This document shows positions 20,192 through 60,803 of a stretch of 64,000 bases of DNA, piece by piece (the stretch's first letter is position 1; the number at the start of each line of letters is the position of its first letter). The DNA is taken from IMG/VR virus record IMGVR_UViG_3300005537_000001, positions 186,001-250,000 of that record; one strand, given 5' to 3'. The notes beneath the pieces were generated by a model. The model ran no database searches and had not been told where the DNA came from. It saw only the letters and a list, made by a program, of their open reading frames with translations. Both the position numbers and the translations under genes were made by a program.

Positions 20192-20720
20192 TTCAGACAT
20201 GCACTATTCGCATCAAAATATTATCAAGTATTGTGACCGACCGTTCTCGACCGTTGAGGAGATGAACGAGCAGCTTATCGCAAACTGGAATGGAGTCGTT
20301 AGCCGCAACGACGTCGTTTATTGCCTCGGTGACATGTTCTTCTGCGATTTGAGCAAAGCGCGGTCCATCATGCACCGCCTGAACGGCACTAAGCGTTTAG
20401 TTCTAGGCAATCACGACAAGATAATTCGCAGGGAGCCGACTCTCCAGGCGCTTTTCGACAAGATCCTCCCAGATCTACACGAGGAGACGATCAACGGTGT
20501 TCGGTTTATCATGTGCCACTATCCCCTGCTTACGTGGAACAAGGCGCATTATGGGTCGATCAATCTCCATGGTCACCAGCATAACAAGCAAGCTATCACG
20601 GCTATAGACCGACGACGATATGACGTTGGAGTAGACGCCAACGGCTACATGCCGGTTAAGTTGGAAAATATTGTTGCCCAGCTTGAAAAGATACAACCAT
20701 CAAGAGGACGAGAAGACTGA
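20175..20720 (+). CDS. calcineurin-like metallophosphoesterase
   Basis: SDMH, LGD, GNHD, HYP, HGHQH, DVGVD motifs. Confidence 0.9.
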   Translation: MNVLFSSDMHYSHQNIIKYCDRPFSTVEEMNEQLIANWNGVVSRNDVVYCLGDMFFCDLSKARSIMHRLNGTKRLVLGNHDKIIRREPTLQALFDKILPDLHEETINGVRFIMCHYPLLTWNKAHYGSINLHGHQHNKQAITAIDRRRYDVGVDANGYMPVKLENIVAQLEKIQPSRGRED

Positions 20721-20869
20721 TGCGCAACATGACTGATCTTCTGAGGAATCACGCTCGAGCTATTTCGATGCAGGTAACAGATTATCGGCTGAAGAAAGCT
20801 GGAATAACTGTCTCGAGGGGAATCGGTATCAGCAGAAATATTCCGAAGGTAGCTAAGTTACCATTGGAC

Positions 20870-21421
20870 CTAATCAAGAGACTTGCTGGCTGACATGCTC
20901 TTCTGTATGGCCTTAAGCTCAGGCCAATTATGCACTTTTTCTAGCGAGTGAAGTAAAGCTGATAAAAACATTTTGGAATCCTCTAAACCAAACCAAAATG
21001 TGCCATGTTCAGAATCGGCATCAACAACTTCTCGATATTTTGCCAACAGTATTTTTATCGTCTTTTCTTTATCTTCGGTACTACCGAGCGCGGCCCGAAC
21101 AAAATCAGCATCGTTGAGCACCTCTATTTCAAAGGGCGGAGTTTCCTCAAGCTGTGAACGTACGATGAAGCATGGTCGTTTACCTCTTAACCATATCACC
21201 GAAACATTATTATTCGCCCCACCATGTTTGGCGTAATATGTTACTTGTTGAGAATTGACGTCGAAACCAGAATTCGTGCGGCCATTCCAACTGTAAAGCG
21301 TACCATCATAATCTATTTCATCTGGGCGCATCGCCATTCCACCACCGACAGTTTCTGCAAATTCATCTAAAGTCTCAACAGAGATCATTTCGTGTGATTC
21401 GAGAAATTCTTTGAATTTCAT
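20870..21421 (-). CDS. hypothetical protein with C-terminal WPEL module
   Basis: MKFKEFLE start at 21421 (ATGA overlap); HNWPELKAIQKSM. Confidence 0.75.
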   Translation of the reverse strand: MKFKEFLESHEMISVETLDEFAETVGGGMAMRPDEIDYDGTLYSWNGRTNSGFDVNSQQVTYYAKHGGANNNVSVIWLRGKRPCFIVRSQLEETPPFEIEVLNDADFVRAALGSTEDKEKTIKILLAKYREVVDADSEHGTFWFGLEDSKMFLSALLHSLEKVHNWPELKAIQKSMSASKSLD

Positions 21422-49128: not shown

Positions 49129-49644
49129 ATGGGTTATTCCGGGTTGCGGAAGATCATATCCGGCGGTCAAGTCGGTGTAGACCGGGGTGCCCTCGCTGCC
49201 GCCTTAGCTTTCGGTGTAGCAACGGGCGGCTGCGCGCCTCGTGGATGGCGAACGGTAACTGGCAGCGCACCAGAATTAGGTAGTTTGTATGGCTTGATAG
49301 AGCACGTTAGCCCAGAGTATCCCCCTCGAACCGAGGCGAACGTTCTCGCGGGCGACGGTACGCTGGTGATAGCTTCAGATCGCAACAGCGCGGGAACGGC
49401 GCTGACGATTCGCTACTGCTTGAAGCACTCGAAGCCGTACCAGCTGGTAGAGCCGCGGCGAACCGAAAGCTGGATAGCTCCGGTAAAGGAGCTCGCCGAG
49501 TGGATTATAAACCGGGAGATTGAAGTACTTAATGTAGCTGGTAACCACCGTGATGGAGCGTACCACGCGGACGTGACGATGGTGATCGTTAACCAGCTGT
49601 TCGTGGAGCTAGAGAAGCGTGATAGATTGGTTAAGAAGGATTAG
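49129..49644 (+). CDS. SLOG-superfamily protein (MoCo-carrier/DprA-like)
   Basis: IISGGQVGVDRGAL...TGG.AP.G...Y..RT..NV...DGTL...GT.LT...LNVAG. Confidence 0.8.
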   Translation: MGYSGLRKIISGGQVGVDRGALAAALAFGVATGGCAPRGWRTVTGSAPELGSLYGLIEHVSPEYPPRTEANVLAGDGTLVIASDRNSAGTALTIRYCLKHSKPYQLVEPRRTESWIAPVKELAEWIINREIEVLNVAGNHRDGAYHADVTMVIVNQLFVELEKRDRLVKKD

Positions 49645-49730: not shown

Positions 49731-50045
49731 TTACTTGCGAAACAGTCCAGCGCGGTACGTTTCGGTCCGCTCTTCGGCGAGCCTTAAGGCTGCCTCCTCC
49801 AACACCGTAACGATCGGGTTGTAGTCGACCTTGTCGGTGTCTGGTACCGGCAGCGAGCTGGTACCAACCGAGGTGATGCCGTCCAGCAGCGAGTCGTTAG
49901 CGCAGCACGGTTCGGCGCAGTCAGCTTCCCACTCGATGCAGCGGCCGACCGTTACGTTGTCACCGTACCAGCTGGTCGGTAGCTCGACGCGTCCGTGCAG
50001 GTTGATGGTGAACAGGCGGTCGAACTCGGTTGGATGTCGGGTCAT
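49731..50045 (-). CDS. hypothetical protein
   Basis: First ORF of the minus-strand block. Confidence 0.5.
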   Translation of the reverse strand: MTRHPTEFDRLFTINLHGRVELPTSWYGDNVTVGRCIEWEADCAEPCCANDSLLDGITSVGTSSLPVPDTDKVDYNPIVTVLEEAALRLAEERTETYRAGLFRK

Positions 50046-50291
50046 GGTAGCAGCTCCACTATCTTCTTGGTTAGCGAATCGATCTCAGCTTGAGCAACCT
50101 GAGTATTATCCTTTACCCACTTATCTATCCTGGCGCGCAGGGCGGTCTGCTGCTCATCGCGCTTCTCACGCAGCGTTTCGATCGTATCTTCCTTCATAGG
50201 ACCACTATGTGGTGAGGTCTAGTGCAGACGTGCGTTAGACCAAAGTGGATGAGACCCTTGCAGGTGGGGCAGCGGACTTCTACGTACTGGC

Positions 50292-50516
50292 TCATTTAAC
50301 TATCCTCAGCTTCTTCTTGAACTTTGAAACGGATGGGCGGTGCTTCTTCGCGGCAGGTCTAACTGACGGTGGCTCGGTAGCCACGCCATCTCGCAGGATG
50401 AAGTCATGGTCCTTTATCTCGAGGGTAAGGGAGGTACCCTTGCCAAGCACCAGCTTGAAGTCGTTGACTGAGCTTATCTGCAGCTCACCTTCTACCGCGG
50501 TAAGGGTTACCTTCAT
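50292..50516 (-). CDS. hypothetical protein with a basic tail
   Basis: MKVTLTAVEGELQI...KKKLRIVK. Confidence 0.55.
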   Translation of the reverse strand: MKVTLTAVEGELQISSVNDFKLVLGKGTSLTLEIKDHDFILRDGVATEPPSVRPAAKKHRPSVSKFKKKLRIVK

Positions 50517-50599
50517 GCGCTGCTCACTTAAGATACCCCAGGTTGAAAGCCAACCCGCGCGAGAGCGTCTTGCACTGTGGTACCTTCGGTCTCCCACTG

Positions 50600-50740
50600 T
50601 GTAGTCGGACGCTGTGCGTCACGACACACTTCGCGGTACGCAGAAGCTGAGATGTGAAGGAGGGTGTAGGTGTCTGTCATGCTCGTATTTATCTAGAAGG
50701 GGTTCAGCAACTGTAGTCGGACGCTGTGCGTCACGACACA
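50600..50740. repeat. two identical 29-bp palindromic direct repeats (50600-50628 and 50712-50740)
   Basis: TGTAGTCGGACGCTGTGCGTCACGACACA x2 with an 83-nt spacer. Confidence 0.9.
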
Positions 50741-50764
50741 GCTTAGTAACGGCGCCTGCGCAAA

Positions 50765-50847
50765 CCCCTTATGAGGTAACCAGGTGTGTAGATATCCCCT
50801 TATGAGGATAGATAAGCCTCTGGAATCCCCTTATAGTGATATATCAC
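50765..50847. repeat. three CCCCTTAT(G)AG boxes at 31-bp period plus a 12-bp palindrome
   Basis: Boxes start at 50765, 50796 and 50827; GTGATATATCAC at 50836-50847. Confidence 0.8.
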
Positions 50848-50990
50848 CTCTGGGGAAAGACCTCTGGCGCTACGGGGGACCCAGGTATTTTTCGCGCGCA
50901 GATTCAGGAGCGGCAGGAATAAATTGCCGATCGCGACACCTGCTCCGGGATGACCCGGATTTTTCTGGTGCGTTAGATCCAAGTCACCTA

Positions 50991-51239
50991 CTACAGTCCG
51001 ATCACCAGAGCTTTGGGCAGCTCCCGCATGTTCGCGTACTCTTCATCGTCCATGCAGCAGTCCTTCGCGCTCCACTCGGTGAAGTATGGCGTGATGTCTC
51101 GGCCGTCCATGTCGAAATTAGCTTCAGCCATTGCCTCAGATAGAAAGTGGTAATGATTACCCTCTTCGTCGGAAGATATCAGGACTACAGCCTCAGGATC
51201 ATGGCTCTCGAGAATTTTTATCAGTTCGCGTACGTTCAT
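50991..51239 (-). CDS. acidic hypothetical protein
   Basis: AAGGAGG RBS. Confidence 0.75.
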   Translation of the reverse strand: MNVRELIKILESHDPEAVVLISSDEEGNHYHFLSEAMAEANFDMDGRDITPYFTEWSAKDCCMDDEEYANMRELPKALVIGL

Positions 51240-51340
51240 GACATCTCCTCCTTACTTGTGGATTTCCTTAAGGGAACTGGACGTACAACCTGGACGTGAC
51301 ACCTTCTCCCGGCGGTCCCGGGAATTTTGGCGCGGTTGGA

Positions 51341-51881
51341 TCAGAGCGTCCAGTGAACCTTTTCATCTTCTACTACGTGCTCGATGCCAGCTAGGGTGAA
51401 CACGCTAGCCATATCCTGGGATAGGTAGCAACCTTGATCGGTGCCGGTCAGCGCCCACAGCAGTCCGCGGAGCATACCATCCAGATGATCGGCGCTGCCT
51501 CCACCGCTCTCAAAGGTCTGCGCCGCCTTGATGATCGCTTTCTGCAGCTCCAGCTTTCTTAGCATCGAGTTATCTCCACAGCTTTTTCTTGACGGCTAGC
51601 TCATGGTGCCTCGCTGCACTTTCACCGCACGGCATCCTGCCGCTGGCTAATCCCTGTCCTCCTGAGTACCTCGCGCTCGGCAGCTGCATCCGCCGCTTCC
51701 CGTAAACGACGTCGGTTGGTACGTGTGGACCGCTGCAGTACGGCGGAAATGGGCCGACGGCGCGGATGAACCACCTGCAGTCCTTGCAGAGCTTCACTTC
51801 GTTCCAGCTCCGTTTAGCAGGTATTGTTCCAGCTGGGCGGCGCGTTGGATCAGTTCCTCGGTGGCTGGATTGTATCTCCAC
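51341..51881 (-). other. two hypothetical CDS (51341-51565, and 51570 to about 51800 with CxxC motifs)
   Basis: Minus-strand ORFs. Confidence 0.55.
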
Positions 51882-51953
51882 GGCGCTTTGATCGCGGCTA
51901 CCAGCGCGAACGCTCGTACTGAAACTGGTGAGGAAGTTTGTGGATAGTGAATG

Positions 51954-52382
51954 TTAAAGTCCTGCATTTAATTTCCCTCGGTCGTTGAGTAAGCTTCTCG
52001 CGATGATCTCCAGCTCATGATTGACGAAGCTGACAGCGTAAGCCGCGCCGATGATTCGAAGCACCAGCTCCTGTTCATCATCTGCAATCGCCTTCTTTAG
52101 CCCCTTTAGGATCCATGGAACCAGGTCGACGAGTGGAGTTATCGCTAACCAGGGTACGTCTTGACCGTACTGGTTCAGGTGCCACCCCACCGTTGAATAA
52201 TATCCACTGCGTCCTACAACGCCACCTTGGGATATGTCTATCAGCTCGCTAAGTGCGATTGTAGATAGCTGAGTTTCCAGCTTTCTGATTTCAAACAACA
52301 GCTCTAACTTTCCCAGCTTGAACGGGTTGTCGAACGGGTTAATCGTTTGACGCGACCTGGTGGCGATAAGGTATTGGTTCAT
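51954..52382 (-). CDS. hypothetical protein, paralog of 52469
   Basis: TPLVDLVPWILKGL...NHELEIIARSL; promoter TGTACT-N17-TAAAAT at 52391-52419. Confidence 0.7.
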   Translation of the reverse strand: MNQYLIATRSRQTINPFDNPFKLGKLELLFEIRKLETQLSTIALSELIDISQGGVVGRSGYYSTVGWHLNQYGQDVPWLAITPLVDLVPWILKGLKKAIADDEQELVLRIIGAAYAVSFVNHELEIIARSLLNDRGKLNAGL

Positions 52383-52468
52383 CTGCGCCTATTTTAACCC
52401 ATCTGGAAACGTAAGTACAACCTGGACCTGACACCTTCTCCGGATGCTCCCCGGATTTTTGGGGCTGG

Positions 52469-52885
52469 TCAAAAGGCGCGCGGGAACGTAAAAGCGCGCC
52501 GCGCGAATTCCGCGCGTCTGTCTTCAACTACCTCGGACCTCAGGCTGTTCTCGATGATGTCAAGCTCCTGATCCTGGTGACCGCTCTCCTTAACGATCTC
52601 GATTATCAGCAGGATCTCGGCCGCGAGACCGGTAGCGACGGCGTCCCGGAGCCCAGCGAGCAGCCACGGTACCAGCTGGGACAGCGGCGTTAGCTGGACC
52701 GGATGCTGCGTGATCCCAACCTTCTTTATCCCTAGAAATTCCTTCAGCGTCTGCGGCGGTTGAAGCGCGTACTCGAGAGAGCGCAGCGTCTGCCAGTCCA
52801 TGACGAGATAATCGGTCGTCGGTCTGTCGACCAGCTCGGCCTGCCAGCCGTGAGCCAACCCAATCAGGAAGTCTGTTTCACTCAT
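52469..52885 (-). CDS. hypothetical protein, paralog of 51954
   Basis: TPLSQLVPWLLAGL...GHQDQELDIIENSL. Confidence 0.7.
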   Translation of the reverse strand: MSETDFLIGLAHGWQAELVDRPTTDYLVMDWQTLRSLEYALQPPQTLKEFLGIKKVGITQHPVQLTPLSQLVPWLLAGLRDAVATGLAAEILLIIEIVKESGHQDQELDIIENSLRSEVVEDRRAEFARRAFTFPRAF

Positions 52886-52927
52886 GCGCTAATTGTAACA
52901 CCAGGCGAGCTGGTAGTAAATAGACGC

Positions 52928-53638
52928 ATGCTGATACAAGATCTACAATCAATTCTAACCGAAGCTCAGGCTCGGCTGTACGCCGGCTGGGTTGGAGCTC
53001 GATCCCACAACTCTTCGGCTATTCACATTTTTATTCCAGATCATAATCATCCGGGTAATAGCCCTAGCAGCCCAATATATGTTTATCCAGGCTTACCATT
53101 TTCAGCTAGTAACGGTGCTCCAGGTACAACAGCTCCAGCTGGAACGAAGGTGTCAATCGGTGGTAAAACAAGCATCAAGGAATTTATCAATTCTGACTAT
53201 GGGATTCGGATGTACGGTCCGTTCATCAAGTTGATTAAATCCCAAAAGATTACAGATCAACAGCTACTTGATTTTGGCGCCAACATCTTAGCGCAAGTTA
53301 TCGCGAGCGGCGCCGACGAGGATAAATATTTTTCGTTTAAAGCCAAGCTACCGACCCAAGATGATATCATTCGGGGAATTCTCAAGATTTACAAGGATGA
53401 GCCCAAGGAGGTTAAGAGATTTATCTCCAACGCCAAGAAGCTTGGGTACAAGATTCCAGACGACGTGCTTGGAGCGATCTCAAAGTCGATCACCCACACT
53501 CGCAAGACTGAGGAGGCGGCGCGTCATGATAGCGCCGTCGCGGCGGCAAAGTCAGCTTTAGATAGAGCGCACCAGCGCCACGAGGATGCGGTTGCACGGC
53601 GTAACGCCTTCTTGAAGAAACACGGATTAGAAAGCTAA
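52928..53638 (+). CDS. late hypothetical protein with shared helical module
   Basis: TAAATA at 52917-52922, 5 nt before the ATG; MLIQDLQSILTEA; KLGYKIPDDVLGAISKS. Confidence 0.75.
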   Translation: MLIQDLQSILTEAQARLYAGWVGARSHNSSAIHIFIPDHNHPGNSPSSPIYVYPGLPFSASNGAPGTTAPAGTKVSIGGKTSIKEFINSDYGIRMYGPFIKLIKSQKITDQQLLDFGANILAQVIASGADEDKYFSFKAKLPTQDDIIRGILKIYKDEPKEVKRFISNAKKLGYKIPDDVLGAISKSITHTRKTEEAARHDSAVAAAKSALDRAHQRHEDAVARRNAFLKKHGLES

Positions 53639-55239
53639 GGTTTCTTTTTCTTCCGAGCCGCGGCGCGCTCAACTCCGCCGGCGTAGACTTCCTGAGCTCG
53701 CGCGCGGCTGTCGAACGGCCCGTACATGTACCACTCGACTACGATGTACCACTTTGCCCAAATCCTGAACGGCTTAACGTTCATCGGTTTTTCTCCGGCG
53801 CTCGGCGGCTCTCCGAAGTTCAGTCTGATAACCAGCTTCAGCCGCTCCCTTGTTAGTCCACGGTCCGTACTGCACACCGTTAACTATGACCCACCAGCCA
53901 GTTCGAAGCGCGAAGGGACCGTGGTTGTTCGCAACCTCTCTCAGCTTCTTTAGGCGATCATACTCATCCTGGCTGATGTGCTCGATGCTGTCCTTCGGCT
54001 TCAGGCAGATGTGACAGCGGCTTTTATCCCGCGCCGTCGCCAAGAAGACGTGGCGGAGGTCCTCGTCTGGCCATGCATCCTTTTCCATGGCTAAATTCCA
54101 ATCAGCTCTAGTTCGACAATTTCGGCGCGATCGTCGAACCACATCTTTTGCGGCGAGGCGAGGTGTTCTTCTGCCGCCTCAAGCGTGACGTAGGCGGCTC
54201 TCGCGCTGATGTTTCCGATAGACTTATTTTCTCCGACGATAACGAAAATCTTCATCGCGTTTCTCCTTAGTTAGACCATCAACCCGTACTGGTGTAGAAA
54301 GAAGGCTCCGTCTGGTTCTTCATTGATCATCTCCATCACCTCGGCAGCGAGCTGGCGCTGGTGTGGCTCCAGCTTCCACCAGAGCACCGCCAGCTGGCGC
54401 AGGTACTTCTGCCTGGTCCGCTGGGTCTTGGCGGCCCGGGCCAGTCGAAAGCAAGTCATGAAGGCAGGGAGGTACGTCATGGCGGGTCACTCGTCGGTTA
54501 CCTCGTCGCACGCCTGCGCGATCGTGTTCAGCCAGCTGCTAACCGCGTCGAGCGCGATTCCTCCCTCCTGAACCGGATGATCCGCCATCCCCTGCAGGAA
54601 CAAGCTGATCATGTAGCCAACGTCCTTGGGACTGACGTCGATGCCGAGCGCGTTTGCCGCGGCGGTTACGTCATCGACGAGTGAGGCGATAGTTTTGATT
54701 TCTCGCGTCATAGCAGCATCATCCTGTAGCCGTGGCTACGTCTTCAACCTCGTCAACGATGTCGGCGACAAGCAGCAACCACGTCGTAACGTAGTTGATT
54801 TCAGGTCCGTCGCTCTCATCATCTGGTCCATCGGCAACTCCCTGCAGGAACAAGCTGATGATGAACGCCGCCTCTCGTGGGCTGATAATTACGCCAACCT
54901 GGGTTGAGGCTAGAGCCGCGTTGTGAACAAGCGCTTCAATCTTGTGCATGGCGTTCACCCGGTGTTGTTCGATACCCACATCCGGGCGATCAGCAGATCA
55001 AGCTGGTGCAGGTCGCTGTCGAGTGACGCAAGCTCAGCTTGAGCGCTTCCATGGCAGCTGCCACCCTTGTGGATCTTGGTGATGTCGCCGACAACTCGAT
55101 CGCGCTCGATTCGCGCGTGGCGCAGCAGGCAGAGCAGCTCAACTCGGTTGTCGATGACGAACGGTGTTTGAAGCTTCAGCCCGATGATCCGGCTGCCTGC
55201 CGTCATCGTTGAAGTTGTATTGATCGGCGGGATTGACAT
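53635..55239 (-). other. run of small early-type CDS (53635-53784, 53774-54088, 54271-54480, 54487-54711, 54719-54958, 54955-55239)
   Basis: Coupled minus-strand ORFs including two paralog pairs. Confidence 0.6.
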
Positions 55240-55261
55240 GACACATTCTCCCTTTGGGCTC

Positions 55262-55285
55262 GGGCAGAGTGTCAGTCCTCTGCCC
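55262..55285 (-). terminator. stem-loop after the histone-like gene
   Basis: GGGCAGAG-N8-CTCTGCCC with no clear U-tract. Confidence 0.45.
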
Positions 55286-55298
55286 TACCCAGGCACCA

Positions 55299-55697
55299 TC
55301 ACAGCGCCGGCTTGATGGCCTCCGCGATGTCGCGTGGGGTGGTATCCTTTCGGTTGGGTACCTGGACTCCCTTGGCCTTCGCCAGCGATAGGAGTTTCGG
55401 TAGGTTGGCTGGCCGTACAGCCACACCCTTGCCCTCGGCTACCGACTTGAGGAATACCGCTCCGTAGCGGAATCCGCGGGGCCCGGCGCGGTGGACCGAC
55501 TTCTTGACCGTCTTGATCCGCTTCGTTACCGCTTCGGCGGTATCCTGATCGACTCGAATTCCCGACGGTCGATTTTGGATGAAGGAGGTCAGCTTCGACA
55601 CCGACTGAATCTTGTGCTGCCGGATCAAGGCTCGAGCCTCGTCCGCGTCCTTAAGACCAAGTTCAGCCGCCTTTTCGATCAGTGCATTCATCTTCAT
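55299..55697 (-). CDS. basic putative DNA-binding protein, paralog of 18309
   Basis: AGPRGFRYGAVFLKSVAEGKGVAVRPANL matches the 18309 protein; AAAGGAG RBS. Confidence 0.75.
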   Translation of the reverse strand: MKMNALIEKAAELGLKDADEARALIRQHKIQSVSKLTSFIQNRPSGIRVDQDTAEAVTKRIKTVKKSVHRAGPRGFRYGAVFLKSVAEGKGVAVRPANLPKLLSLAKAKGVQVPNRKDTTPRDIAEAIKPAL

Positions 55698-55875
55698 GGT
55701 CGTCTCCTTTGCTGTGTTGCGTTATGTTCCTGATGGAGCTATTCCATCAGGTAGGGATATCATACAACCTGTCATCAATCAGTTATATAGTCCTTTAGGC
55801 CAGGTTCATGTAGTCCCAGGACTACAAGGTTTACAAATTATGTTAAATGAAGATCTTCCTATTATGTTAAATCGG

Positions 55876-56208
55876 TTAGTCACCGCCGGCAAGCGACTGC
55901 AGGGCGAGCAGCGTCAGCAGGTGGGCCCGGTCAAGTCGTCTAATCTTTCCAGCTTTGAGATCATCGTGCATCGCGTCCCGCGCCTTCCGAAGAAATATAA
56001 TCGCGTCGTGCAGCGGAGTGTTTCCACTTCGCCTCCCCTTGTCCAGCTTCTGCTTCTCAAGCCCGAGCTGCTGCCGCCACTTGTAGAGGGCGGAGTTCGG
56101 AATTTTAAGATTGTCAGCGATTACCTGTGGGCTCTCCTTCTTCATCCGCGCGACCGCCAACCGCTTGAACTTTTCGGTGTACGTCTTTCGCTTCTTCATT
56201 TTCTTCAT
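55876..56208 (-). CDS. helix-turn-helix protein resembling IS3 OrfA (HTH_Tnp_1)
   Basis: RKTYTEKFKRLAV...QVIADNLKI..SALYKWRQQ. Confidence 0.7.
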   Translation of the reverse strand: MKKMKKRKTYTEKFKRLAVARMKKESPQVIADNLKIPNSALYKWRQQLGLEKQKLDKGRRSGNTPLHDAIIFLRKARDAMHDDLKAGKIRRLDRAHLLTLLALQSLAGGD

Positions 56209-57314
56209 CGTCCTCGTCTCCGTGCTGGTGTTTCAACGTGGTCCATGCGGCTAGAGTACCTCGCTAGGTCGTCCCTCCGCTTCACTATCTCGGCGGGTCG
56301 CCGCTTTGCCCAGCTGTTCAAATTTGCTCGACACCTTTGACACGTGTCGAGCTTGCTCCGTGGGCTCAGCTCATCTCCGCAGTTCTTGATGACGCATCGT
56401 CTTACTGTCATGCGAATTATCCTGTTTGTTTGGGTTTTACTTCTTCAATCGTCAGCGCCGCGTCCAACTCCTGTCTCGGCAGCGTTCGACTCCAGAGCTC
56501 CGCCAGAAGTTCAGCGTGCCTCGCGGTCCGCCGCTTTATCTCTTCTGTTTCAAGCCGGAGATCTAGAATGAGCTCCTCCATCGTCATATCCTCAAGCTTA
56601 ACCATCTGCTCCCCTCCCCTTCGCGCCTTAGCGCTTGAACAAACCCCTGAAGCGCTGAATCATGGATTCAGACGCGTCTAGGTGTTCCTTAACCTCCATC
56701 TCGGATGGTTTAGGCTCTACAAGCTCAGCCGGCGGTTGGACTATGTCGGTCACCTTGATCTTCGTAGACGTATCTCCGCTCTTCTGATCTCCGCGCAGCT
56801 TGCGATCGATCCACTCAAAGTAGTTCATCCCGCGACCTCCCTATCGCTATCTTCATCGTTGCGCCGGAGCAGCTCCTCCATTTCCTCCGCCGTAACTATC
56901 ATCGCGCTTATCGAACTTTTGAAGCTGTCCAGCTGCTGCAGGCACTCCTGTACCGACTGTCGAAGGGCCTGAACCTCATACCACTTAGTCGCGGCGGGAT
57001 GTTCGGCAACCATCCGATTTATTAGCTTCTGGCAAGCTATGGTCATCTTTAGCACTTTCTCTTGTAGCATCTGTCGCTCCCTAATTTTGTGGGCGCTCTG
57101 GATCCTTCGAGGCGTTTCTAACGCCGGCAAAAAAACCAGAGATGTAAACCGTCAGCAGCAGCTCCTTCAGCAGCAGCTCCCTTTCAGGAACATCTTGACA
57201 GAAGAAACCAACCACCTCTGCCTTTTCCTTCATTATCGAATCGACGTGAAGAGATACTTCCTGGGTTTTCTCCTCTGGCGCCAACCGAATGGTATCTTCA
57301 GTCTGTATGATCAT
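56205..57314 (-). other. run of small CDS (56205-56411, 56417-56605, 56628-56828, 56825-57070, 57081-57314)
   Basis: RBS-led minus-strand ORFs. Confidence 0.6.
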
Positions 57315-57400
57315 GTGCTCACCCCAGCACCGAGGCAAGGTTGAAGCTGAAAAATTTCTTCATTGAAACTCCTAGTTGTTAAAGAACGTGAAACGTTCTA

Positions 57401-57429
57401 ATTATAACATGAACCTGGGCCAGGTTACA
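57401..57429 (-). promoter_or_regulatory. early promoter driving the leftward block
   Basis: TGTAAC-N17-TATAAT with TG extension on the minus strand. Confidence 0.75.
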
Positions 57430-57478
57430 TAGGAGGGAAAGTGCAGGTTGGAGGGTGGGATAATTGCCGGTTAGCGTG

Positions 57479-57484
57479 TAAATA
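57479..57484 (+). promoter_or_regulatory. late promoter TAAATA
   Basis: 29 nt before ATG 57514. Confidence 0.6.
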
Positions 57485-57513
57485 GTTGAACGCACGTTAG
57501 CTGGAAGTGAAAA

Positions 57514-57783
57514 ATGCTACTCAAAGATTTGCTTGTGTACGAAGAAACAAAGTCAGCTGCCGTCCACCCGCACACGGAAACTCTCTCCAAGCTAATTCAC
57601 GACATTCGAAATCCGCTCGGCGCGATCTTAACGACGAACCGGATGCTAGCTTCTGGTGTGTCTGACGAAAGTCTTTTCAAGTTTATTGAGCTACAGGATG
57701 TAGCGTGCCGGGAGATAAAAGAGCTGCTGCGGGTCGCGGCTGAAACCTTACCAGCTAAAGCTAATTGGCTGAAGAAAACCTAA
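57514..57783 (+). CDS. stand-alone histidine kinase dimerisation/phosphoacceptor (HisKA/DHp)-like protein
   Basis: LSKLIHDIRNPLGAI H-box, second helix, no ATPase domain. Confidence 0.75.
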   Translation: MLLKDLLVYEETKSAAVHPHTETLSKLIHDIRNPLGAILTTNRMLASGVSDESLFKFIELQDVACREIKELLRVAAETLPAKANWLKKT

Positions 57784-57796
57784 GCTGGAGCGTCAC

Positions 57797-58363
57797 GTGA
57801 ATTTACATCAACTTCTAGAAGCAGCAGCTCCAACATTTGATAATTTGACAGGTAAAGACATTGGGCTTCATCCACACATATTTGGGGCTCCATTCGTGGC
57901 TGTCAGGTGGAAGATAGGTGGAAATAATGGGCAAGCCCTCGTGGATTTCCCGGCTGGTAAGCCGCCCATCGTATCAACGCGCGGCGAAGATACAGAGCGA
58001 GCATTCATAGCAGCAAATAAAAGCCTACTGATAGATTTTGCAAGTAACCTACTGCTGCAGGCGGTCGCGCTAGGTACTGATTTCACAGGTGCCCGCGATC
58101 GCCCATCGAAATATAAACCGGTATCAAGTCAGGCCTTGGCGCGCGGAATTTTATCGTGGTACAAAACAGTTAACCATAAAATGATGACCAATCTGCTTGC
58201 GACAGTTAAGGCGGTGGGTGGTCATCTACCAGCTGACGTTGTAGCCGCTGTGGGAAAGAGCATTGGCGTTACTCGTGTCGTGGAGCTTAAAAAGCGAATC
58301 GCGTCAACTAAAGCTAGTCTTGCTAAAATGGAAGCCGAACTAGCGGAGCTGGAAGCAAAATAG
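57797..58363 (+). CDS. late hypothetical protein with shared helical module and coiled-coil tail
   Basis: MNLHQLLEAA; KAVGGHLPADVVAAVGKS. Confidence 0.7.
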   Translation: MNLHQLLEAAAPTFDNLTGKDIGLHPHIFGAPFVAVRWKIGGNNGQALVDFPAGKPPIVSTRGEDTERAFIAANKSLLIDFASNLLLQAVALGTDFTGARDRPSKYKPVSSQALARGILSWYKTVNHKMMTNLLATVKAVGGHLPADVVAAVGKSIGVTRVVELKKRIASTKASLAKMEAELAELEAK

Positions 58364-58441
58364 CGTCGACGTTATAGCCTAGCTCTAATTTGTTCGAGCA
58401 GTGATTGTATCGTTTTGAGCAGCTCAATTATCTGCTGTGTT

Positions 58442-59549
58442 TCAGTCACGTGATTCTCCAAGCTTTGAGTTGTGCAGCTCTACGATGTGGTGAGCTATCT
58501 TTTGTCCAACGTTAAAGGCAACACCTTCTTGATTCTTGTACTCGACCCCAAAATCAGATCTACCTGGCTTTACCACAGCTGAGAAGATGCTGCCACCTCG
58601 AGCAACCCATTTCTCCTTGAGCAGATCGCTCATTTACCAATTCCAAGCTGATCACCGCAGCGGCAGTCGCTGAAAAATCCGCACTTGATGATGCAGATAC
58701 CGCGTGAGTCGTATTGCGGTAAGGTCGAAACCAACCACGTGGTGCTGCCGCATTCTGGACAGCTATCGGCGTCTTTCGTCCAAAGATGTCCGCACTTAAC
58801 GCACTGATTTTGCTTAATTGTCATTATGCATGCGCCACATCTTCACAAGCCCATCGATCTGGTCTTGTATTCGCTTGACGCAGAGGAGCTTCGCGTTTTT
58901 GTAGTGAGAGTTACCATTTACGAATCGCGGGATCCAAAAGTGGTGTTCATCCTCCCACACATACGCTAGCGACCACTCACCCTCTACTACGCTGTAATTT
59001 TCTTCAGTCGATTTAAGAGGATACGTGAACGTAAGTGGCTCGTTCAAAAATGCCATCATGATTTCGAATTGAACGAAGTGACCACCGCTACCCATGCGAT
59101 CAACAAAGTAGGCATCGCTTATCGCGAGAATGTGATCGAGGTCGATGTAGCGACCTATTAAATCTGAATGGTAGACTCTCATGCTTCTTTGTCCTTGTGC
59201 CAATTGCTCTCACGACACAATGGGCACTGAATGAATGGTGGATTCTGCAGTGGGAGTACTAGGTCGCTGTAGTTGTACGTGAAGATGCTCTTGCATCGCC
59301 CGCACTTCATCTTGTACAGCGTAGGAGGCCCGAGATTATCCTTAATGATGGTTACTGTCATTTTGCTGCTTTTCCTGTTCTACCATCAACGTCGCACCAG
59401 GGACAAATGTGCAGAGCGCCACGATCAGCTGTATCCTTACTCATCCCCCACTCACTTTGTAACTTTTCAGACCAAGCGTCCTTGAGAATTTGGATCAAGT
59501 GACCATATCCGATTCTATCCGCCAACTCGATGACTTGAGCTTCATTCAT
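58442..59549 (-). other. run of small CDS (58442-58633, 58630-58824 Zn ribbon, 58814-59182, 59179-59361 Zn ribbon, 59358-59549)
   Basis: ATGA-coupled minus-strand ORFs. Confidence 0.6.
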
Positions 59550-60010
59550 ACCGGTTGCACCAACCAATGTCGGCGGTCTTGAACGACGTCACGCTTAGCT
59601 TTCAAAAAGACATACGCTGCGTCCAAATCTGGTTGTAAACCATTCTTGACCATCCACGTGGCTAGAGTGAGCGGGCTGCGCTCAACTCCACCAAGACAGT
59701 GAATCAAGAGTGGTCTGTAGCTGTCGTAGTAATCATCAAGAAGCAGGTGGGCAACTGCCAGCTTGCCTGGGTCAACAAGCCGCTTGCGCTGAATACGATT
59801 TATTTCTTCCTCAGCTCCCTGCGTCGCGAAGTAATCTCCAATGACCAGTGGTACTTCCGGCTCTACGTTAAGGATAGGAACGTGGAATGTCGGCGTGTAG
59901 CCAGGAACTATATCCTCATGGACATAGAGGGTGTCCATCTTTGTCTGCTCACCAGCGAAGGTAGCATCCTTGATGTTGCCAAGGTAGATGCTGCGGATTA
60001 TGTTGTTCAC
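59546..60010 (-). CDS. dual-specificity/tyrosine protein phosphatase
   Basis: CX5R loop LIHCLGGVERS; IYLGN. Confidence 0.85.
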   Translation of the reverse strand: MNNIIRSIYLGNIKDATFAGEQTKMDTLYVHEDIVPGYTPTFHVPILNVEPEVPLVIGDYFATQGAEEEINRIQRKRLVDPGKLAVAHLLLDDYYDSYRPLLIHCLGGVERSPLTLATWMVKNGLQPDLDAAYVFLKAKRDVVQDRRHWLVQPV

Positions 60011-60468
60011 GTGTTGACGCTTGCTTTAATTTGGGAAAAGTTATCTACCCGCTCCACCCAACCAGTGCCTTCACACGTCTCGCATCTTATCCGCGGCCAA
60101 ATCAACGTATCAAACGTATCTTGCTTGCCTATTTCTCGTAGATTATCATGTGTGCCAAAATTTTCGAAACAACCAAAAACAGTCCTCCAGGCCGGAGGTC
60201 TCTGAAGTTTATCGAACAGTTCAAGCGTAACAAAACGTTTTCTGATGGTTCCCAGATTACCGCATGTTGTACAAATAATTTTCATTTACTTGCTCACCTT
60301 TTCTTCAATGCATATCCATGACCCTGGAGCTACAGCTTGAATAGCTTGATACTTCATGCCGCCCCACCTGTACAGCACCAACGTTCCTTCATCTTCGATT
60401 GTAAAGCGATCAGCTTTTACATCGATACCGCTCGTATTCCAAGTGGTCCACATGGTGAATGTTTTCAT
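60007..60468 (-). other. two small CDS (60007-60285 with CxxC pairs; 60286-60468)
   Basis: Coupled ORFs. Confidence 0.55.
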
Positions 60469-60803
60469 GAGTATCCTTTACAGCTTCGTGAGCGCGATGA
60501 TCGCGAGGAGCCCAATGAGAAACTTCAGCTTGAAAATTTGAATGTCAGCGTACTCATTCATCGCCGCTCGCCGAACGTGCTCAGGTTGAATAGCTTCTGT
60601 TCTGTCCGAAGGGGAGATAGGACCCATGATTCTCTTGAAATATTCCATGCGCGCTCCAGGGGTGAGGATTCATCTTAACACGTTGAGAATGGGATGTATA
60701 CGGATATTTGGGCGGACTCAGGTGTTCATCTGATCCTCGCCGTGATAAAATCTCATTCTATCCTAGATTGCGATCAAAGTAAATAATTCAGATACGTGTC
60801 AGC

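What the first reader, a model, noticed from the sequence alone, without database searches (positions are those of the whole stretch)
50765..50880. Iteron-like boxes with exact 31-bp periodicity next to a perfect palindrome
CCCCTTATGAGG (50765), CCCCTTATGAGG (50796) and CCCCTTATAG (50827) are three helical turns apart, so they lie on one DNA face. The third runs into the GTGATATATCAC palindrome. This is typical of initiator- or terminase-binding arrays and lies about 1 kb from the plus/minus strand switch. Inference: a replication origin or packaging site.
Basis: partly seen in the sequence, partly recalled or inferred. Interest (0 to 1): 0.65.

Follow-up and report, generated by a model that had tools for sequence, protein, structure and literature searches.

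The report
Phased protein-binding boxes beside phage promoter
Three 12-bp boxes spaced exactly 31 bp apart in a 368-kb soil phage genome are real, are kept in the same helical phase in related phages, and most likely form a protein-binding control array next to a late-type promoter rather than a proven replication origin or packaging site.

Summary
CCCCTTAT occurs only three times in the whole 368,054-bp phage genome, all three here and 31 bp apart.

Metagenome contigs from related uncultured phages carry a homologous roughly 300-bp non-coding cassette:
- The closest relative has four boxes at 31/31/31 bp.
- A second lineage has five boxes at 21/31/20/22 bp.
- A distant lineage has diverged boxes at 23/42/42 bp.

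All of these spacings are near multiples of about 10.5 bp. The box is a dyad, CCyC-WWWW-GGGG, which suggests a dimeric binder.

In every lineage the array lies upstream of an inverted half-box and a T4-late-type (A/G)TAAATA promoter motif. That motif sits 4-6 nt before a start codon and drives an operon containing a conserved 74-aa protein. At the far end of the cassette is a conserved stretch closed by an intrinsic terminator that points away from the operon.

Packaging-site reading: rejected. The large terminase gene lies about 150 kb away, and no assembly ends at the locus.

Origin reading: neither supported nor excluded. There is no AT-rich unwinding element, no recognisable initiator gene and no skew change.

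Best reading: a helically phased operator or enhancer array. The protein that binds it is unknown.

The parts
50765..50776 (-). Box 1, the promoter-proximal box. CCTCATAAGGGG on the gene (minus) strand; dyad CCyC-WWWW-GGGG.
   Evidence: Aligns with the third box of L019 on its 5' side. Its 3' flank resembles that of the fourth L019 box.
50796..50807 (-). Box 2, identical in its 12 bp to box 1 and 31 bp from it.
   Evidence: 10 of 12 positions identical to the homologous L019 box.
50827..50838 (-). Box 3, the distal box. CACTATAAGGGG on the minus strand. In relatives it is the perfect palindrome CCCCTATAGGGG.
50836..50849 (.). The 12-bp palindrome GTGATATATCAC (50836-50847), inside the conserved element GGTGATAT(AT) that abuts the distal box.
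   Evidence: Unique in the genome. GGTGATAT is invariant in 4 sequences, but the palindrome itself is lost in L019 and L014.
50697..50704 (.). Inverted half-box, AACCCCTT on the gene strand, between the array and the promoter motif.
   Evidence: Present at the matching place in L019 and L014-L016, 10-23 bp before the TAAATA motif.
50686..50692 (-). ATAAATA, the phage's T4-late-type promoter motif. Five nucleotides separate it from the ATG at 50680, which implies a leaderless-type start.
   Evidence: The motif occurs 82 times in the genome, 62 of them within 120 nt upstream of a same-strand start. (A/G/T)TAAATA lies 4-6 nt before the ATG in all five lineages. T4 late promoters are an 8-bp TATA box about one turn before the start site (PMC2988020).
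50528..50680 (-). Remnant of gene X, a 50-codon ORF. Only about the first 17 codons match the 71-96-aa X proteins of the nearer relatives, so it is probably a pseudogene or leader.
   Evidence: Not called by the JGI or ENA annotation. Marginal coding score. Low language-model recognition score.
50600..50628 (.). 29-bp hairpin repeat, copy 1, inside the X remnant.
   Evidence: Unique to this locus in the genome.
50712..50740 (.). 29-bp hairpin repeat, copy 2, inserted between box 1 and the inverted half-box. Absent at this place in L019.
50850..50943 (+). Conserved non-coding body, including CCTCTGG at 50861. It could be the body of a small RNA read on the plus strand.
   Evidence: 53-55 of 78 positions identical to L019, L014 and L015 over 50848-50925. 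There are 1-nt indels, so no conserved ORF. Consensus fold with G-U pairs and 2 compensatory pairs in the plus orientation. No Rfam family. No phage-type promoter found for it.
50944..50969 (+). Intrinsic terminator, a hairpin followed by a T run, pointing away from the operon.
   Evidence: All lineages have a hairpin with a T run in this same orientation. In L015 the hairpin sequence is replaced by a different one, and the diverged L022 also keeps a hairpin with a T run.
50292..50516 (-). Gene for a conserved 74-aa protein: a five-strand beta domain with a basic tail ending in LRIVK. It is the constant cargo of the cassette.
   Evidence: Homologs at 43-89% identity in metagenome contigs. AlphaFold pLDDT about 75 for residues 1-45. 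No fold match. No Pfam or PHROG family.
49731..50197 (-). Downstream operon genes: a 51-aa coiled-coil protein (50042-50197) and a 104-aa protein (49731-50045).
   Evidence: Homologs of the 51-aa gene follow the 74-aa gene in the relatives.
50991..51239 (-). Upstream 82-aa gene, the last gene of the early transcription unit. It differs from the upstream genes of the relatives.
   Evidence: Early-type promoters at 52419, 52920 and 60783 on the minus strand.

Best explanation
The three boxes are binding sites for a sequence-specific, probably dimeric, DNA-binding protein. Integral numbers of helical turns separate them, so bound dimers sit on one face of the DNA and can bind cooperatively. The array belongs to a conserved non-coding cassette of about 300 bp in a hyperplastic block of small early genes of a T4-like jumbo phage.

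The cassette runs as follows on the gene (minus) strand:
1. A terminator that faces away from the operon.
2. A conserved body of about 95 nt.
3. GGTGATAT.
4. Three to five phased dyad boxes.
5. An inverted half-box.
6. An (A/G)TAAATA late-type promoter motif, 4-6 nt before the start codon of an operon (gene X, then the 74-aa and 51-aa genes).

The most likely function is transcriptional control, as operator or enhancer, of that promoter. It may also control a divergent terminator-ended RNA of about 125 nt.

Shown here: the boxes, their uniqueness in the genome, conservation of sequence and phase, and the constant link to the promoter motif and the operon.

Inferred: protein binding, the identity of the binder, whether it activates or represses, and the existence of the plus-strand RNA.
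For: - Uniqueness and statistics of the boxes.
- Homologous cassette in relatives: L019 positions 239-444 match window 50971-50765 at 77% identity (E = 2e-35). L014 positions 989-1135 match window 50970-50823 at 71%.
- Conserved phasing: 31/31 here; 31/31/31 in L019; 21/31/20/22 in L014-L016.
- The distant lineage L017, L018 and L022 has diverged boxes (TTAGGA in place of AAGGGG) at 23/42/42 bp. Pooled phase concentration is R = 0.87, p about 7e-4.
- Two boxes in L019 and one in L014 are perfect 12-bp palindromes, which fits a dimeric binder.
- Copy number differs by exactly one 31-bp unit between the window and L019, so phase is kept.
- ATAAATA is a genuine promoter-type motif of this phage, with 62 of 82 copies upstream of genes. 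The phage has T4-type Gp23.
- The motif, the inverted half-box 10-23 bp before it, and an ATG 4-6 nt after it recur in all lineages, even though the flanking genes differ.
- No early-type promoter lies in the region. The best matrix score is 2.9, against 10-20 or more for real ones.
- The independent JGI gene calls leave the same 474 bp uncalled; the ENA calls leave an even larger gap.
Against: - No binding protein has been identified. All neighbouring small proteins lack Pfam or PHROG families. The 74-aa protein has no fold match and no language-model match.
- T4-type late promoters are not known to use upstream sites (PMC2988020), so a regulatory array here would be unusual.
- The late class of the ATAAATA motif is inferred from its similarity to the T4 box and from its position before the operons holding the capsid and terminase genes. 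It is not shown by expression data.
- Contigs from the two closer lineages (L011-L013, L020, L021) are too short to show whether they carry the array.
- No RNA data exist for this phage.
- Only four or five lineages are available, and some share ancestry.
Confidence: 0.55

Rival explanations
1. The array is an iteron-type replication origin. An initiator would bind the phased boxes, and the adjacent promoter or the plus-strand transcript would supply a primer. This resembles the proposals for T4 oriE and the primary origin of T7.
For: - Evenly spaced 12-bp repeats on one DNA face, unique in the genome and conserved in relatives.
- The locus is 1 kb from a strand switch. Active T4 origins tend to lie near such switches, and T4 oriE has evenly spaced 12-nt repeats (PMC3016281).
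- Transcription signals lie next to the array on both strands.
- No other long intergenic region of the genome has an iteron-like array.
Against: - There is no AT-rich unwinding element. The gap is 54% G+C, while several other long gaps are 37-39%.
- No initiator-like gene lies beside it.
- Cumulative GC skew has no turn at 236.8 kb.
- The array sits in an accessory block that Xanthomonas phage X1 lacks.
- Box number varies from 3 to 5, and the array always travels with one promoter and operon.
- The T4 oriE repeats were never tied to replication. They are the 24-bp codon repeat of the gene 5 beta-helix.
Confidence: 0.15
2. The array is a packaging recognition site (pac or cos) bound by the small terminase.
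For: Repeated boxes on one face resemble the terminase-binding boxes of lambda cosB and SPP1 pac. This comparison is from general knowledge and was not tested here.
Against: - The Terminase_6N gene is at 20.5 kb, about 150 kb away by the shorter way round the circle.
- The T4-type capsid gene fits a T4-like phage; T4 itself has a circularly permuted genome without defined ends (PMC3016281).
- The 110-bp terminal repeat is an assembly overlap.
- The JGI and ENA assemblies are opened at different points, neither at the locus. A 76.8-kb Logan contig runs straight through it.
Confidence: 0.02
3. The conserved cassette is mainly a recombination module, like the PeSL terminator-promoter cassettes of T4-type phages. 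Its conservation would reflect use as a point of gene exchange, and the boxes would be incidental.
For: - The same cassette is flanked by different upstream genes: an 82-aa gene here, a 41-aa ORF in L019 and L014, other sequence in L015.
- It lies in a hyperplastic block of small ORFs.
- The surroundings show a deleted gene X, a duplicated 29-bp element, and a 32-nt duplication in L011.
- PeSLs are composite terminator/promoter motifs that mediate shuffling (PMC4122927).
Against: - By their published definition, PeSLs are small motifs that carry an early promoter. This cassette is about 300 bp, carries a late-type motif, and its terminator faces the other way.
- Exchange alone does not explain dyad boxes held at integral helical turns while the spacers diverge.
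Confidence: 0.1
4. The functional unit is a small RNA gene on the plus strand (about 50845-50968), and the boxes are its promoter or upstream elements.
For: - The terminator orientation is conserved in all lineages, even where the hairpin sequence has been replaced.
- The conserved body has 1-nt indels and no conserved ORF.
- The consensus fold has orientation-specific G-U pairs and 2 compensatory pairs.
Against: - Folding energy is not better than shuffles, z = -0.42.
- No Rfam family matches.
- There is no early-type or late-type promoter on that strand.
- Stem-loop 1 does not appear to be kept in the diverged L022 lineage, judging by eye from the sequence.
- No RNA runs are available.
Confidence: 0.12
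5. The boxes are tandem promoters for a T7-like single-subunit RNA polymerase. Their cores resemble CACTATAGGG and CACTAAAGGG.
For: A resemblance by eye to the -7 to +3 core of T7 and T3 promoters. This is recalled from memory, not tested.
Against: No PF00940 match in the genome, although the control genomes did not match either. The motif occurs nowhere else in the genome.
Confidence: 0.02

Closest known systems
Bacteriophage T4 oriE 'iterons'
   Same: [quoted passage not shown]
   Different: The T4 repeats are GTTGAAGGTAAT every 24 bp, inside gene 5, where they encode the beta-helix octapeptide repeat. No replication role was ever shown for them. The boxes here are non-coding, dyad-symmetric, 31 bp apart (not a multiple of 3), and linked to a promoter.
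Iteron origins of plasmids and lambdoid phages (R6K gamma origin, lambda ori)
   Same: Several in-phase copies of a short site, each with dyad character, unique in the replicon. Iteron origins bind initiators at direct repeats (PMC3016281).
   Different: Those origins have an adjacent AT-rich unwinding element and lie in or beside the initiator gene (general knowledge). Both features were looked for here and neither was found. Usual iteron spacing is about 22 bp (from memory) rather than 31.
PeSL promoter-terminator cassettes of T4-type hyperplastic regions
   Same: A conserved composite non-coding cassette with a terminator and a promoter, between variable small ORFs in a plastic region of a T4-like genome (PMC2839356; PMC4122927).
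   Different: This cassette is about 300 bp, whereas PeSLs are described as small. It has a late-type ATAAATA motif rather than an early promoter. Its terminator faces away from the downstream genes. It contains a phased array of dyad boxes.
Helically phased operator or centromere arrays next to promoters (for example R1 parC bound by ParR, or looping operators such as gal OE/OI); recalled from general knowledge
   Same: Multiple short sites at integral helical turns flanking or preceding a promoter, bound cooperatively by small dimeric proteins that are often encoded in the operon they control.
   Different: No ParR-, ribbon-helix-helix- or HTH-type protein could be recognised in the operon. 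Sequence family and phage context are different. Membership cannot be claimed.
T4 late promoter (TATAAATA box)
   Same: An ATAAATA motif about one helical turn before the presumed start, with no -35 element, spread through the genome before many genes, including the operons that hold the capsid and terminase genes (PMC2988020).
   Different: Here it directly abuts the start codon, giving a leaderless layout. It is preceded by a site-specific box array, which is not a known feature of T4 late promoters.

Membership tests
Iteron-type replication origin | Three or more direct repeats of an initiator site in helical phase | tested here: met
   Three boxes at 31/31 bp. Relatives have 31/31/31 and 21/31/20/22.
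Iteron-type replication origin | Adjacent AT-rich DNA-unwinding element | tested here: not met
   The gap is 54% G+C. The only AT-rich runs are about 10-17 bp. Other gaps of the genome are 37-39% G+C but have no repeats.
Iteron-type replication origin | Initiator gene in or beside the origin | tested here: inconclusive
   Flanking genes encode 33-104-aa proteins with no Pfam, PHROG or fold match. A new small initiator cannot be excluded.
Iteron-type replication origin | Strand-composition switch or replication start at the site | tested here: inconclusive
   Cumulative GC skew has no turn at 236.8 kb, but skew in T4-like phages follows transcription. No raw reads or infected-cell data are available.
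pac or cos packaging site | Located in or next to the terminase genes | tested here: not met
   The only Terminase_6N match is at 20,469-21,125, while the locus is at 236.8 kb.
pac or cos packaging site | Physical genome ends or read-start pile-up at the site | tested here: inconclusive
   Assemblies are circular-type and are opened elsewhere. Contigs span the site. Raw reads were not available.
T4 oriE iterons | 12-nt repeats every 24 bp within the gene 5 region | tested here: not met
   The T4 repeats lie inside gene 5 at 24-bp spacing. The boxes here are intergenic at 31-bp spacing.
PeSL cassette | Stem-loop terminator directly followed by an early sigma-70-type promoter, both serving the downstream gene | tested here: not met
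   No early-type promoter is present (best matrix score 2.9). The terminator has its T run on the opposite strand.
T4-type late promoter | TATAAATA-like box about 10 bp before the start, no -35 element, many copies before late genes | tested here: met
   ATAAATA at 50686-50692 on the minus strand. 62 of 82 genomic copies lie upstream of same-strand starts, with no conserved -35 columns. T4-type Gp23 is present. The start site itself was not mapped.
T4-type late promoter | Dependence on gp55, gp33 and gp45 | not tested
   Homologs were not searched for, and no expression data exist.
Any described RNA family (Rfam 15) | Match to a covariance model at the gathering score | tested here: not met
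   The best match is Guanidine-II at 17.7 bits against a threshold of 32, E = 0.68.

The most novel reading that the evidence does not exclude
The cassette is a self-contained, sequence-specific control unit new to T4-like phages. A small phage protein would nucleate on one face of the 3-5 dyad boxes and switch a leaderless late-type promoter. That would be a fixed enhancer or operator where T4 itself uses only the mobile sliding clamp. The same protein could also fire a divergent, terminator-ended RNA of about 125 nt. That RNA could act as a regulator or as a primer, which would make the cassette a combined iteron and transcript origin.
Probability: 0.15. Interest if true: 0.7.

Novelty: new variant of a known kind. 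Interest (0 to 1): 0.45.

Why it matters
Cis-acting control sites in jumbo and T4-like phages from soil are almost unknown, because nearly everything we know comes from T4 itself. This cassette is an undescribed, conserved non-coding element whose architecture is clear enough to test directly: dyad boxes kept at whole helical turns, a half-box beside a late-type promoter, a leaderless start, and a terminator facing the other way.

If the boxes regulate a late-type promoter, some T4-like late promoters would take sequence-specific input. If they mark an origin, this would be the first iteron origin with comparative support in this phage group. In T4 the supposed iterons coincide with a 24-bp repeat inside gene 5, which I read as that gene's beta-helix codon repeat.

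The work also yields the early and late promoter consensus of this uncultured 368-kb phage, which is useful for annotating its relatives.

Tried and rejected
- DNA similarity to 50,697 phage records: none.
- Exact 29-mer search in IMG/VR: none.
- Relatives of the neighbouring cpYpsA gene in IMG/VR: none.
- Three CCCCTTAT boxes with 21-25-bp gaps in IMG/VR: three hits, all unrelated tandem repeats in other viruses.
- Word-index protein searches with the 82-aa and 104-aa neighbours found only the query itself. tblastn against phages gave nothing useful.
- The relatives came from the exhaustive profile search with the 74-aa protein and a follow-up search with its alignment.
- My first DNA pattern for the conserved body was mis-specified by one N and found nothing. 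The corrected pattern found only the phage's own contig, L016 and chance coding matches.
- The 50-aa ORF as a ribbon-helix-helix autoregulator was rejected: no PDB or Atlas support, a low recognition score, and it is a remnant of gene X.
- The 74-aa protein as an AbrB-like binder has no support. The single-sequence model was poor. The alignment model gave a five-strand beta domain with no fold match.
- Overall RNA folding of either strand is not better than shuffles.
- The sigma-70 consensus scan was not enriched over shuffles. The TAGATA-17-TATAGT hit on the plus strand is not conserved in relatives, by my reading of the alignment.
- T7-type polymerase promoters: no polymerase gene found.
- Read laying: only Logan contigs of the source sample were available. 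It showed no variants, no ends and no copy-number change.
- Complex prediction was not used, because no candidate pair was well enough founded.

Full report
**Context**

The window is positions 186,001-250,000 of a 368,054-bp IMG/VR virus record from a soil metagenome. Its 110-bp terminal repeat is an assembly overlap.

The phage is a distant T4-like jumbo phage:
- It has a T4-type major capsid protein, Gp23, with E = 1e-94.
- It has a Terminase_6N large terminase at 20.5 kb and a family B DNA polymerase at 283.7 kb.
- It has topoisomerase II subunits 44-52% identical to those of Xanthomonas phages X1, BUDD, XacN1 and Xoo-sp13.
- It carries 44 tRNA genes.

**The observation**

- CCCCTTAT occurs only three times in the whole genome, all here, against about nine expected.
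- A repeated 8-mer in three copies arose in 15 of 5000 shuffles of the region.
- A matrix built from 12 boxes of three lineages, including these three, scores them at about 20 bits. The best site anywhere else scores 15.2.
- Boxes 1 and 2 are identical, while their spacers match at only 2 of 17 positions by my count from the units printed. This speaks against a recent slippage copy.
- Once tRNA clusters are set aside, this is the most repeat-rich intergenic gap of the genome.

**Gene context**

- Plus-strand genes end at 49644 with a cpYpsA SLOG protein.
- From 49731 to about 60650 there is a minus-strand block of about 35 small ORFs. Its G+C content is higher than the rest of the genome.
- In Xanthomonas phage X1, topoisomerase II and thymidylate synthase are 14 kb apart with all genes on one strand. 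The minus-strand block therefore looks like an accessory, hyperplastic region.
- The JGI gene calls leave exactly 50517-50990 (474 bp) uncalled, between an 82-aa gene and a 74-aa gene, both on the minus strand; the ENA calls omit the 74-aa gene and leave a larger gap.
- The boxes therefore lie upstream of a minus-strand operon, not between convergent genes.

**The phage's promoters**

K-mer enrichment in upstream regions gave two classes:
- An early class, TGTACTT or TTTACTT followed by N17 and (gTGa)TAtAAT, found before about 43 genes.
- The heptamer ATAAATA. Of its 82 copies, 62 lie within 120 nt upstream of a same-strand start, and there is no conserved -35 element. This matches the T4 late promoter described in PMC2988020.

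Early-type promoters sit at 60783, 52920 and 52419 on the minus strand. None lies in the 474-bp gap on either strand. An ATAAATA lies at 50692-50686 on the minus strand, five nucleotides before an ATG at 50680.

**Relatives**

DNA searches and word-index protein searches found nothing. The exhaustive search with the 74-aa protein found homologs, and a search with their alignment found more. Their contigs are short, but several include the upstream region.

- L019 encodes a homolog 89% identical. It aligns to window 50971-50765 at 77% identity (E = 2e-35).
- L014-L016 align to window 50970-50823 at 71%.
- On the gene strand the box consensus is CCyC-WWWW-GGGG followed by (A/C)T. Two boxes in L019 and one in L014 are perfect palindromes.
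- Spacing is 31/31/31 in L019 and 21/31/20/22 in L014-L016.
- The most distant lineage (L017, L018, L022) has diverged boxes with a TTAGGA core at 23/42/42 bp.
- Eight non-redundant spacings give a phase concentration of R = 0.87 at a 10.5-bp period, with p about 7e-4.
- The window and L019 differ by exactly one 31-bp unit. Window box 1 looks like a fusion of L019 boxes 3 and 4.

**The cassette**

In all lineages the order on the gene strand is the same:
1. A hairpin preceded by an A run, which is an intrinsic terminator for the opposite strand. L015 and L022 have hairpins of different sequence, but the T run is on the same side.
2. A body of about 95 nt, identical at 53-55 of 78 positions, with 1-nt indels and so no conserved ORF.
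3. GGTGATAT.
4. The box array.
5. An inverted half-box, AACCCCTT.
6. (A/G/T)TAAATA, followed 4-6 nt later by an ATG.

That ATG opens gene X: 96 aa in L019, 143-146 aa in L014-L016, and about 71 aa from its first ATG on the truncated contig L020. In the distant lineage it opens the 74-aa homolog directly.

In the window, gene X is reduced to a 50-codon remnant, and only the first 17 or so codons are homologous. A 29-bp hairpin element is present twice, at 50600 and 50712, and the second copy has been inserted between box 1 and the half-box.

**Interpretation**

Four features point to a dimeric sequence-specific protein binding cooperatively on one DNA face and acting on that promoter:
- The boxes are dyad-symmetric.
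- They are kept at whole helical turns while the spacers change.
- There is a half-box right beside the promoter motif.
- The link to one promoter and one operon holds whatever the flanking genes are.

I put this at 0.55.

The binder is unknown:
- None of the small neighbouring proteins has a family.
- The 74-aa protein folds as a five-strand beta domain with a disordered basic tail, and has no structural match.
- An HTH_Tnp_1 protein lies 5 kb upstream. Similar genes sit next to the 74-aa homolog in the distant lineage. This is a lead only.

The outward-facing terminator and the conserved body suggest a divergent small RNA. Against that, its folding energy is unremarkable, no promoter was found for it, and there are no RNA data.

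**Origin and packaging readings**

- A pac or cos site is very unlikely. The terminase gene is about 150 kb away, the assemblies are of circular type and are opened elsewhere, and contigs run through the site.
- An origin cannot be excluded, but it lacks an AT-rich unwinding element, a recognisable initiator gene and a skew signal.
- The nearest precedent is the set of evenly spaced 12-nt repeats at T4 oriE (PMC3016281). Inspection shows them to be GTTGAAGGTAAT every 24 bp inside gene 5, which I read as the codon repeat of its beta-helix. According to the review, no replication role has ever been established for them.

**Limits**

- All relatives are short metagenome contigs.
- Lineages are few and partly related.
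- No expression, binding or replication data exist.
- The late class of the promoter motif is inferred.

Noticed in passing
G000 genome 90242-90646, 104836-117851, 139898-145869 (outside the window): ARAGORN finds 44 tRNA genes and a tmRNA-like gene in two clusters. Two tRNAs at 124199 and 126682 have anticodon CTA and would read TAG.
   Followed up: no
window 60783, 52920, 52419 (minus strand) and genome-wide: The phage's early promoter consensus, TGTACTT or TTTACTT, N17, (gTGa)TAtAAT, often has CAGGTT in the spacer. It lies upstream of about 43 genes.
   Followed up: partly
genome-wide; in the window for example 2317, 42520, 12967: ATAAATA, a T4-late-like motif, is found 82 times, 62 of them just upstream of same-strand genes. 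Five copies lie only 5-6 nt before the start codon, which suggests leaderless mRNAs.
   Followed up: partly
window 49731-60650: A minus-strand block of about 35 small ORFans, with G+C of 0.53-0.58 against 0.47 for the genome. It is missing between topoisomerase II and thymidylate synthase in Xanthomonas phage X1, so it is a hyperplastic region.
   Followed up: partly
window 55876-56208 (minus strand); L017 568-912; L022 1303-1623: A 110-aa protein with an HTH_Tnp_1 domain (29.4 bits). Similar genes lie next to the 74-aa homolog in the distant lineage. It is a possible DNA-binding candidate.
   Followed up: no
window 50600-50628 and 50712-50740: Two identical 29-bp imperfect hairpins, 112 bp apart, bracket the promoter motif and the start of the gene X remnant. 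They are absent at these places in L019. They may mark the rearrangement that truncated gene X, or act as paired operators.
   Followed up: partly
L040 3927-4070 (T4 genome 79426-79569): The T4 oriE 'iterons' are GTTGAAGGTAAT every 24 bp inside gene 5. I read them as the codon repeat of the gp5 beta-helix.
   Followed up: yes
L011 242-273 and 366-397: A 32-nt duplication of the start of the 74-aa gene lies 124 bp upstream of the real start in one relative. This is a sign of local recombination.
   Followed up: no
window 59546-60010 (minus strand): A 154-aa ORF with a weak dual-specificity phosphatase match, DSPc at E = 2e-5, below the family cut-off.
   Followed up: no
window 50194-50295 (minus strand): An uncalled 33-codon ORF with a CxxC...HxC pattern and a good ribosome-binding site. 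Its ATG overlaps the stop of the 74-aa gene (TAAATG), so it may be a real small zinc-binding protein.
   Followed up: no
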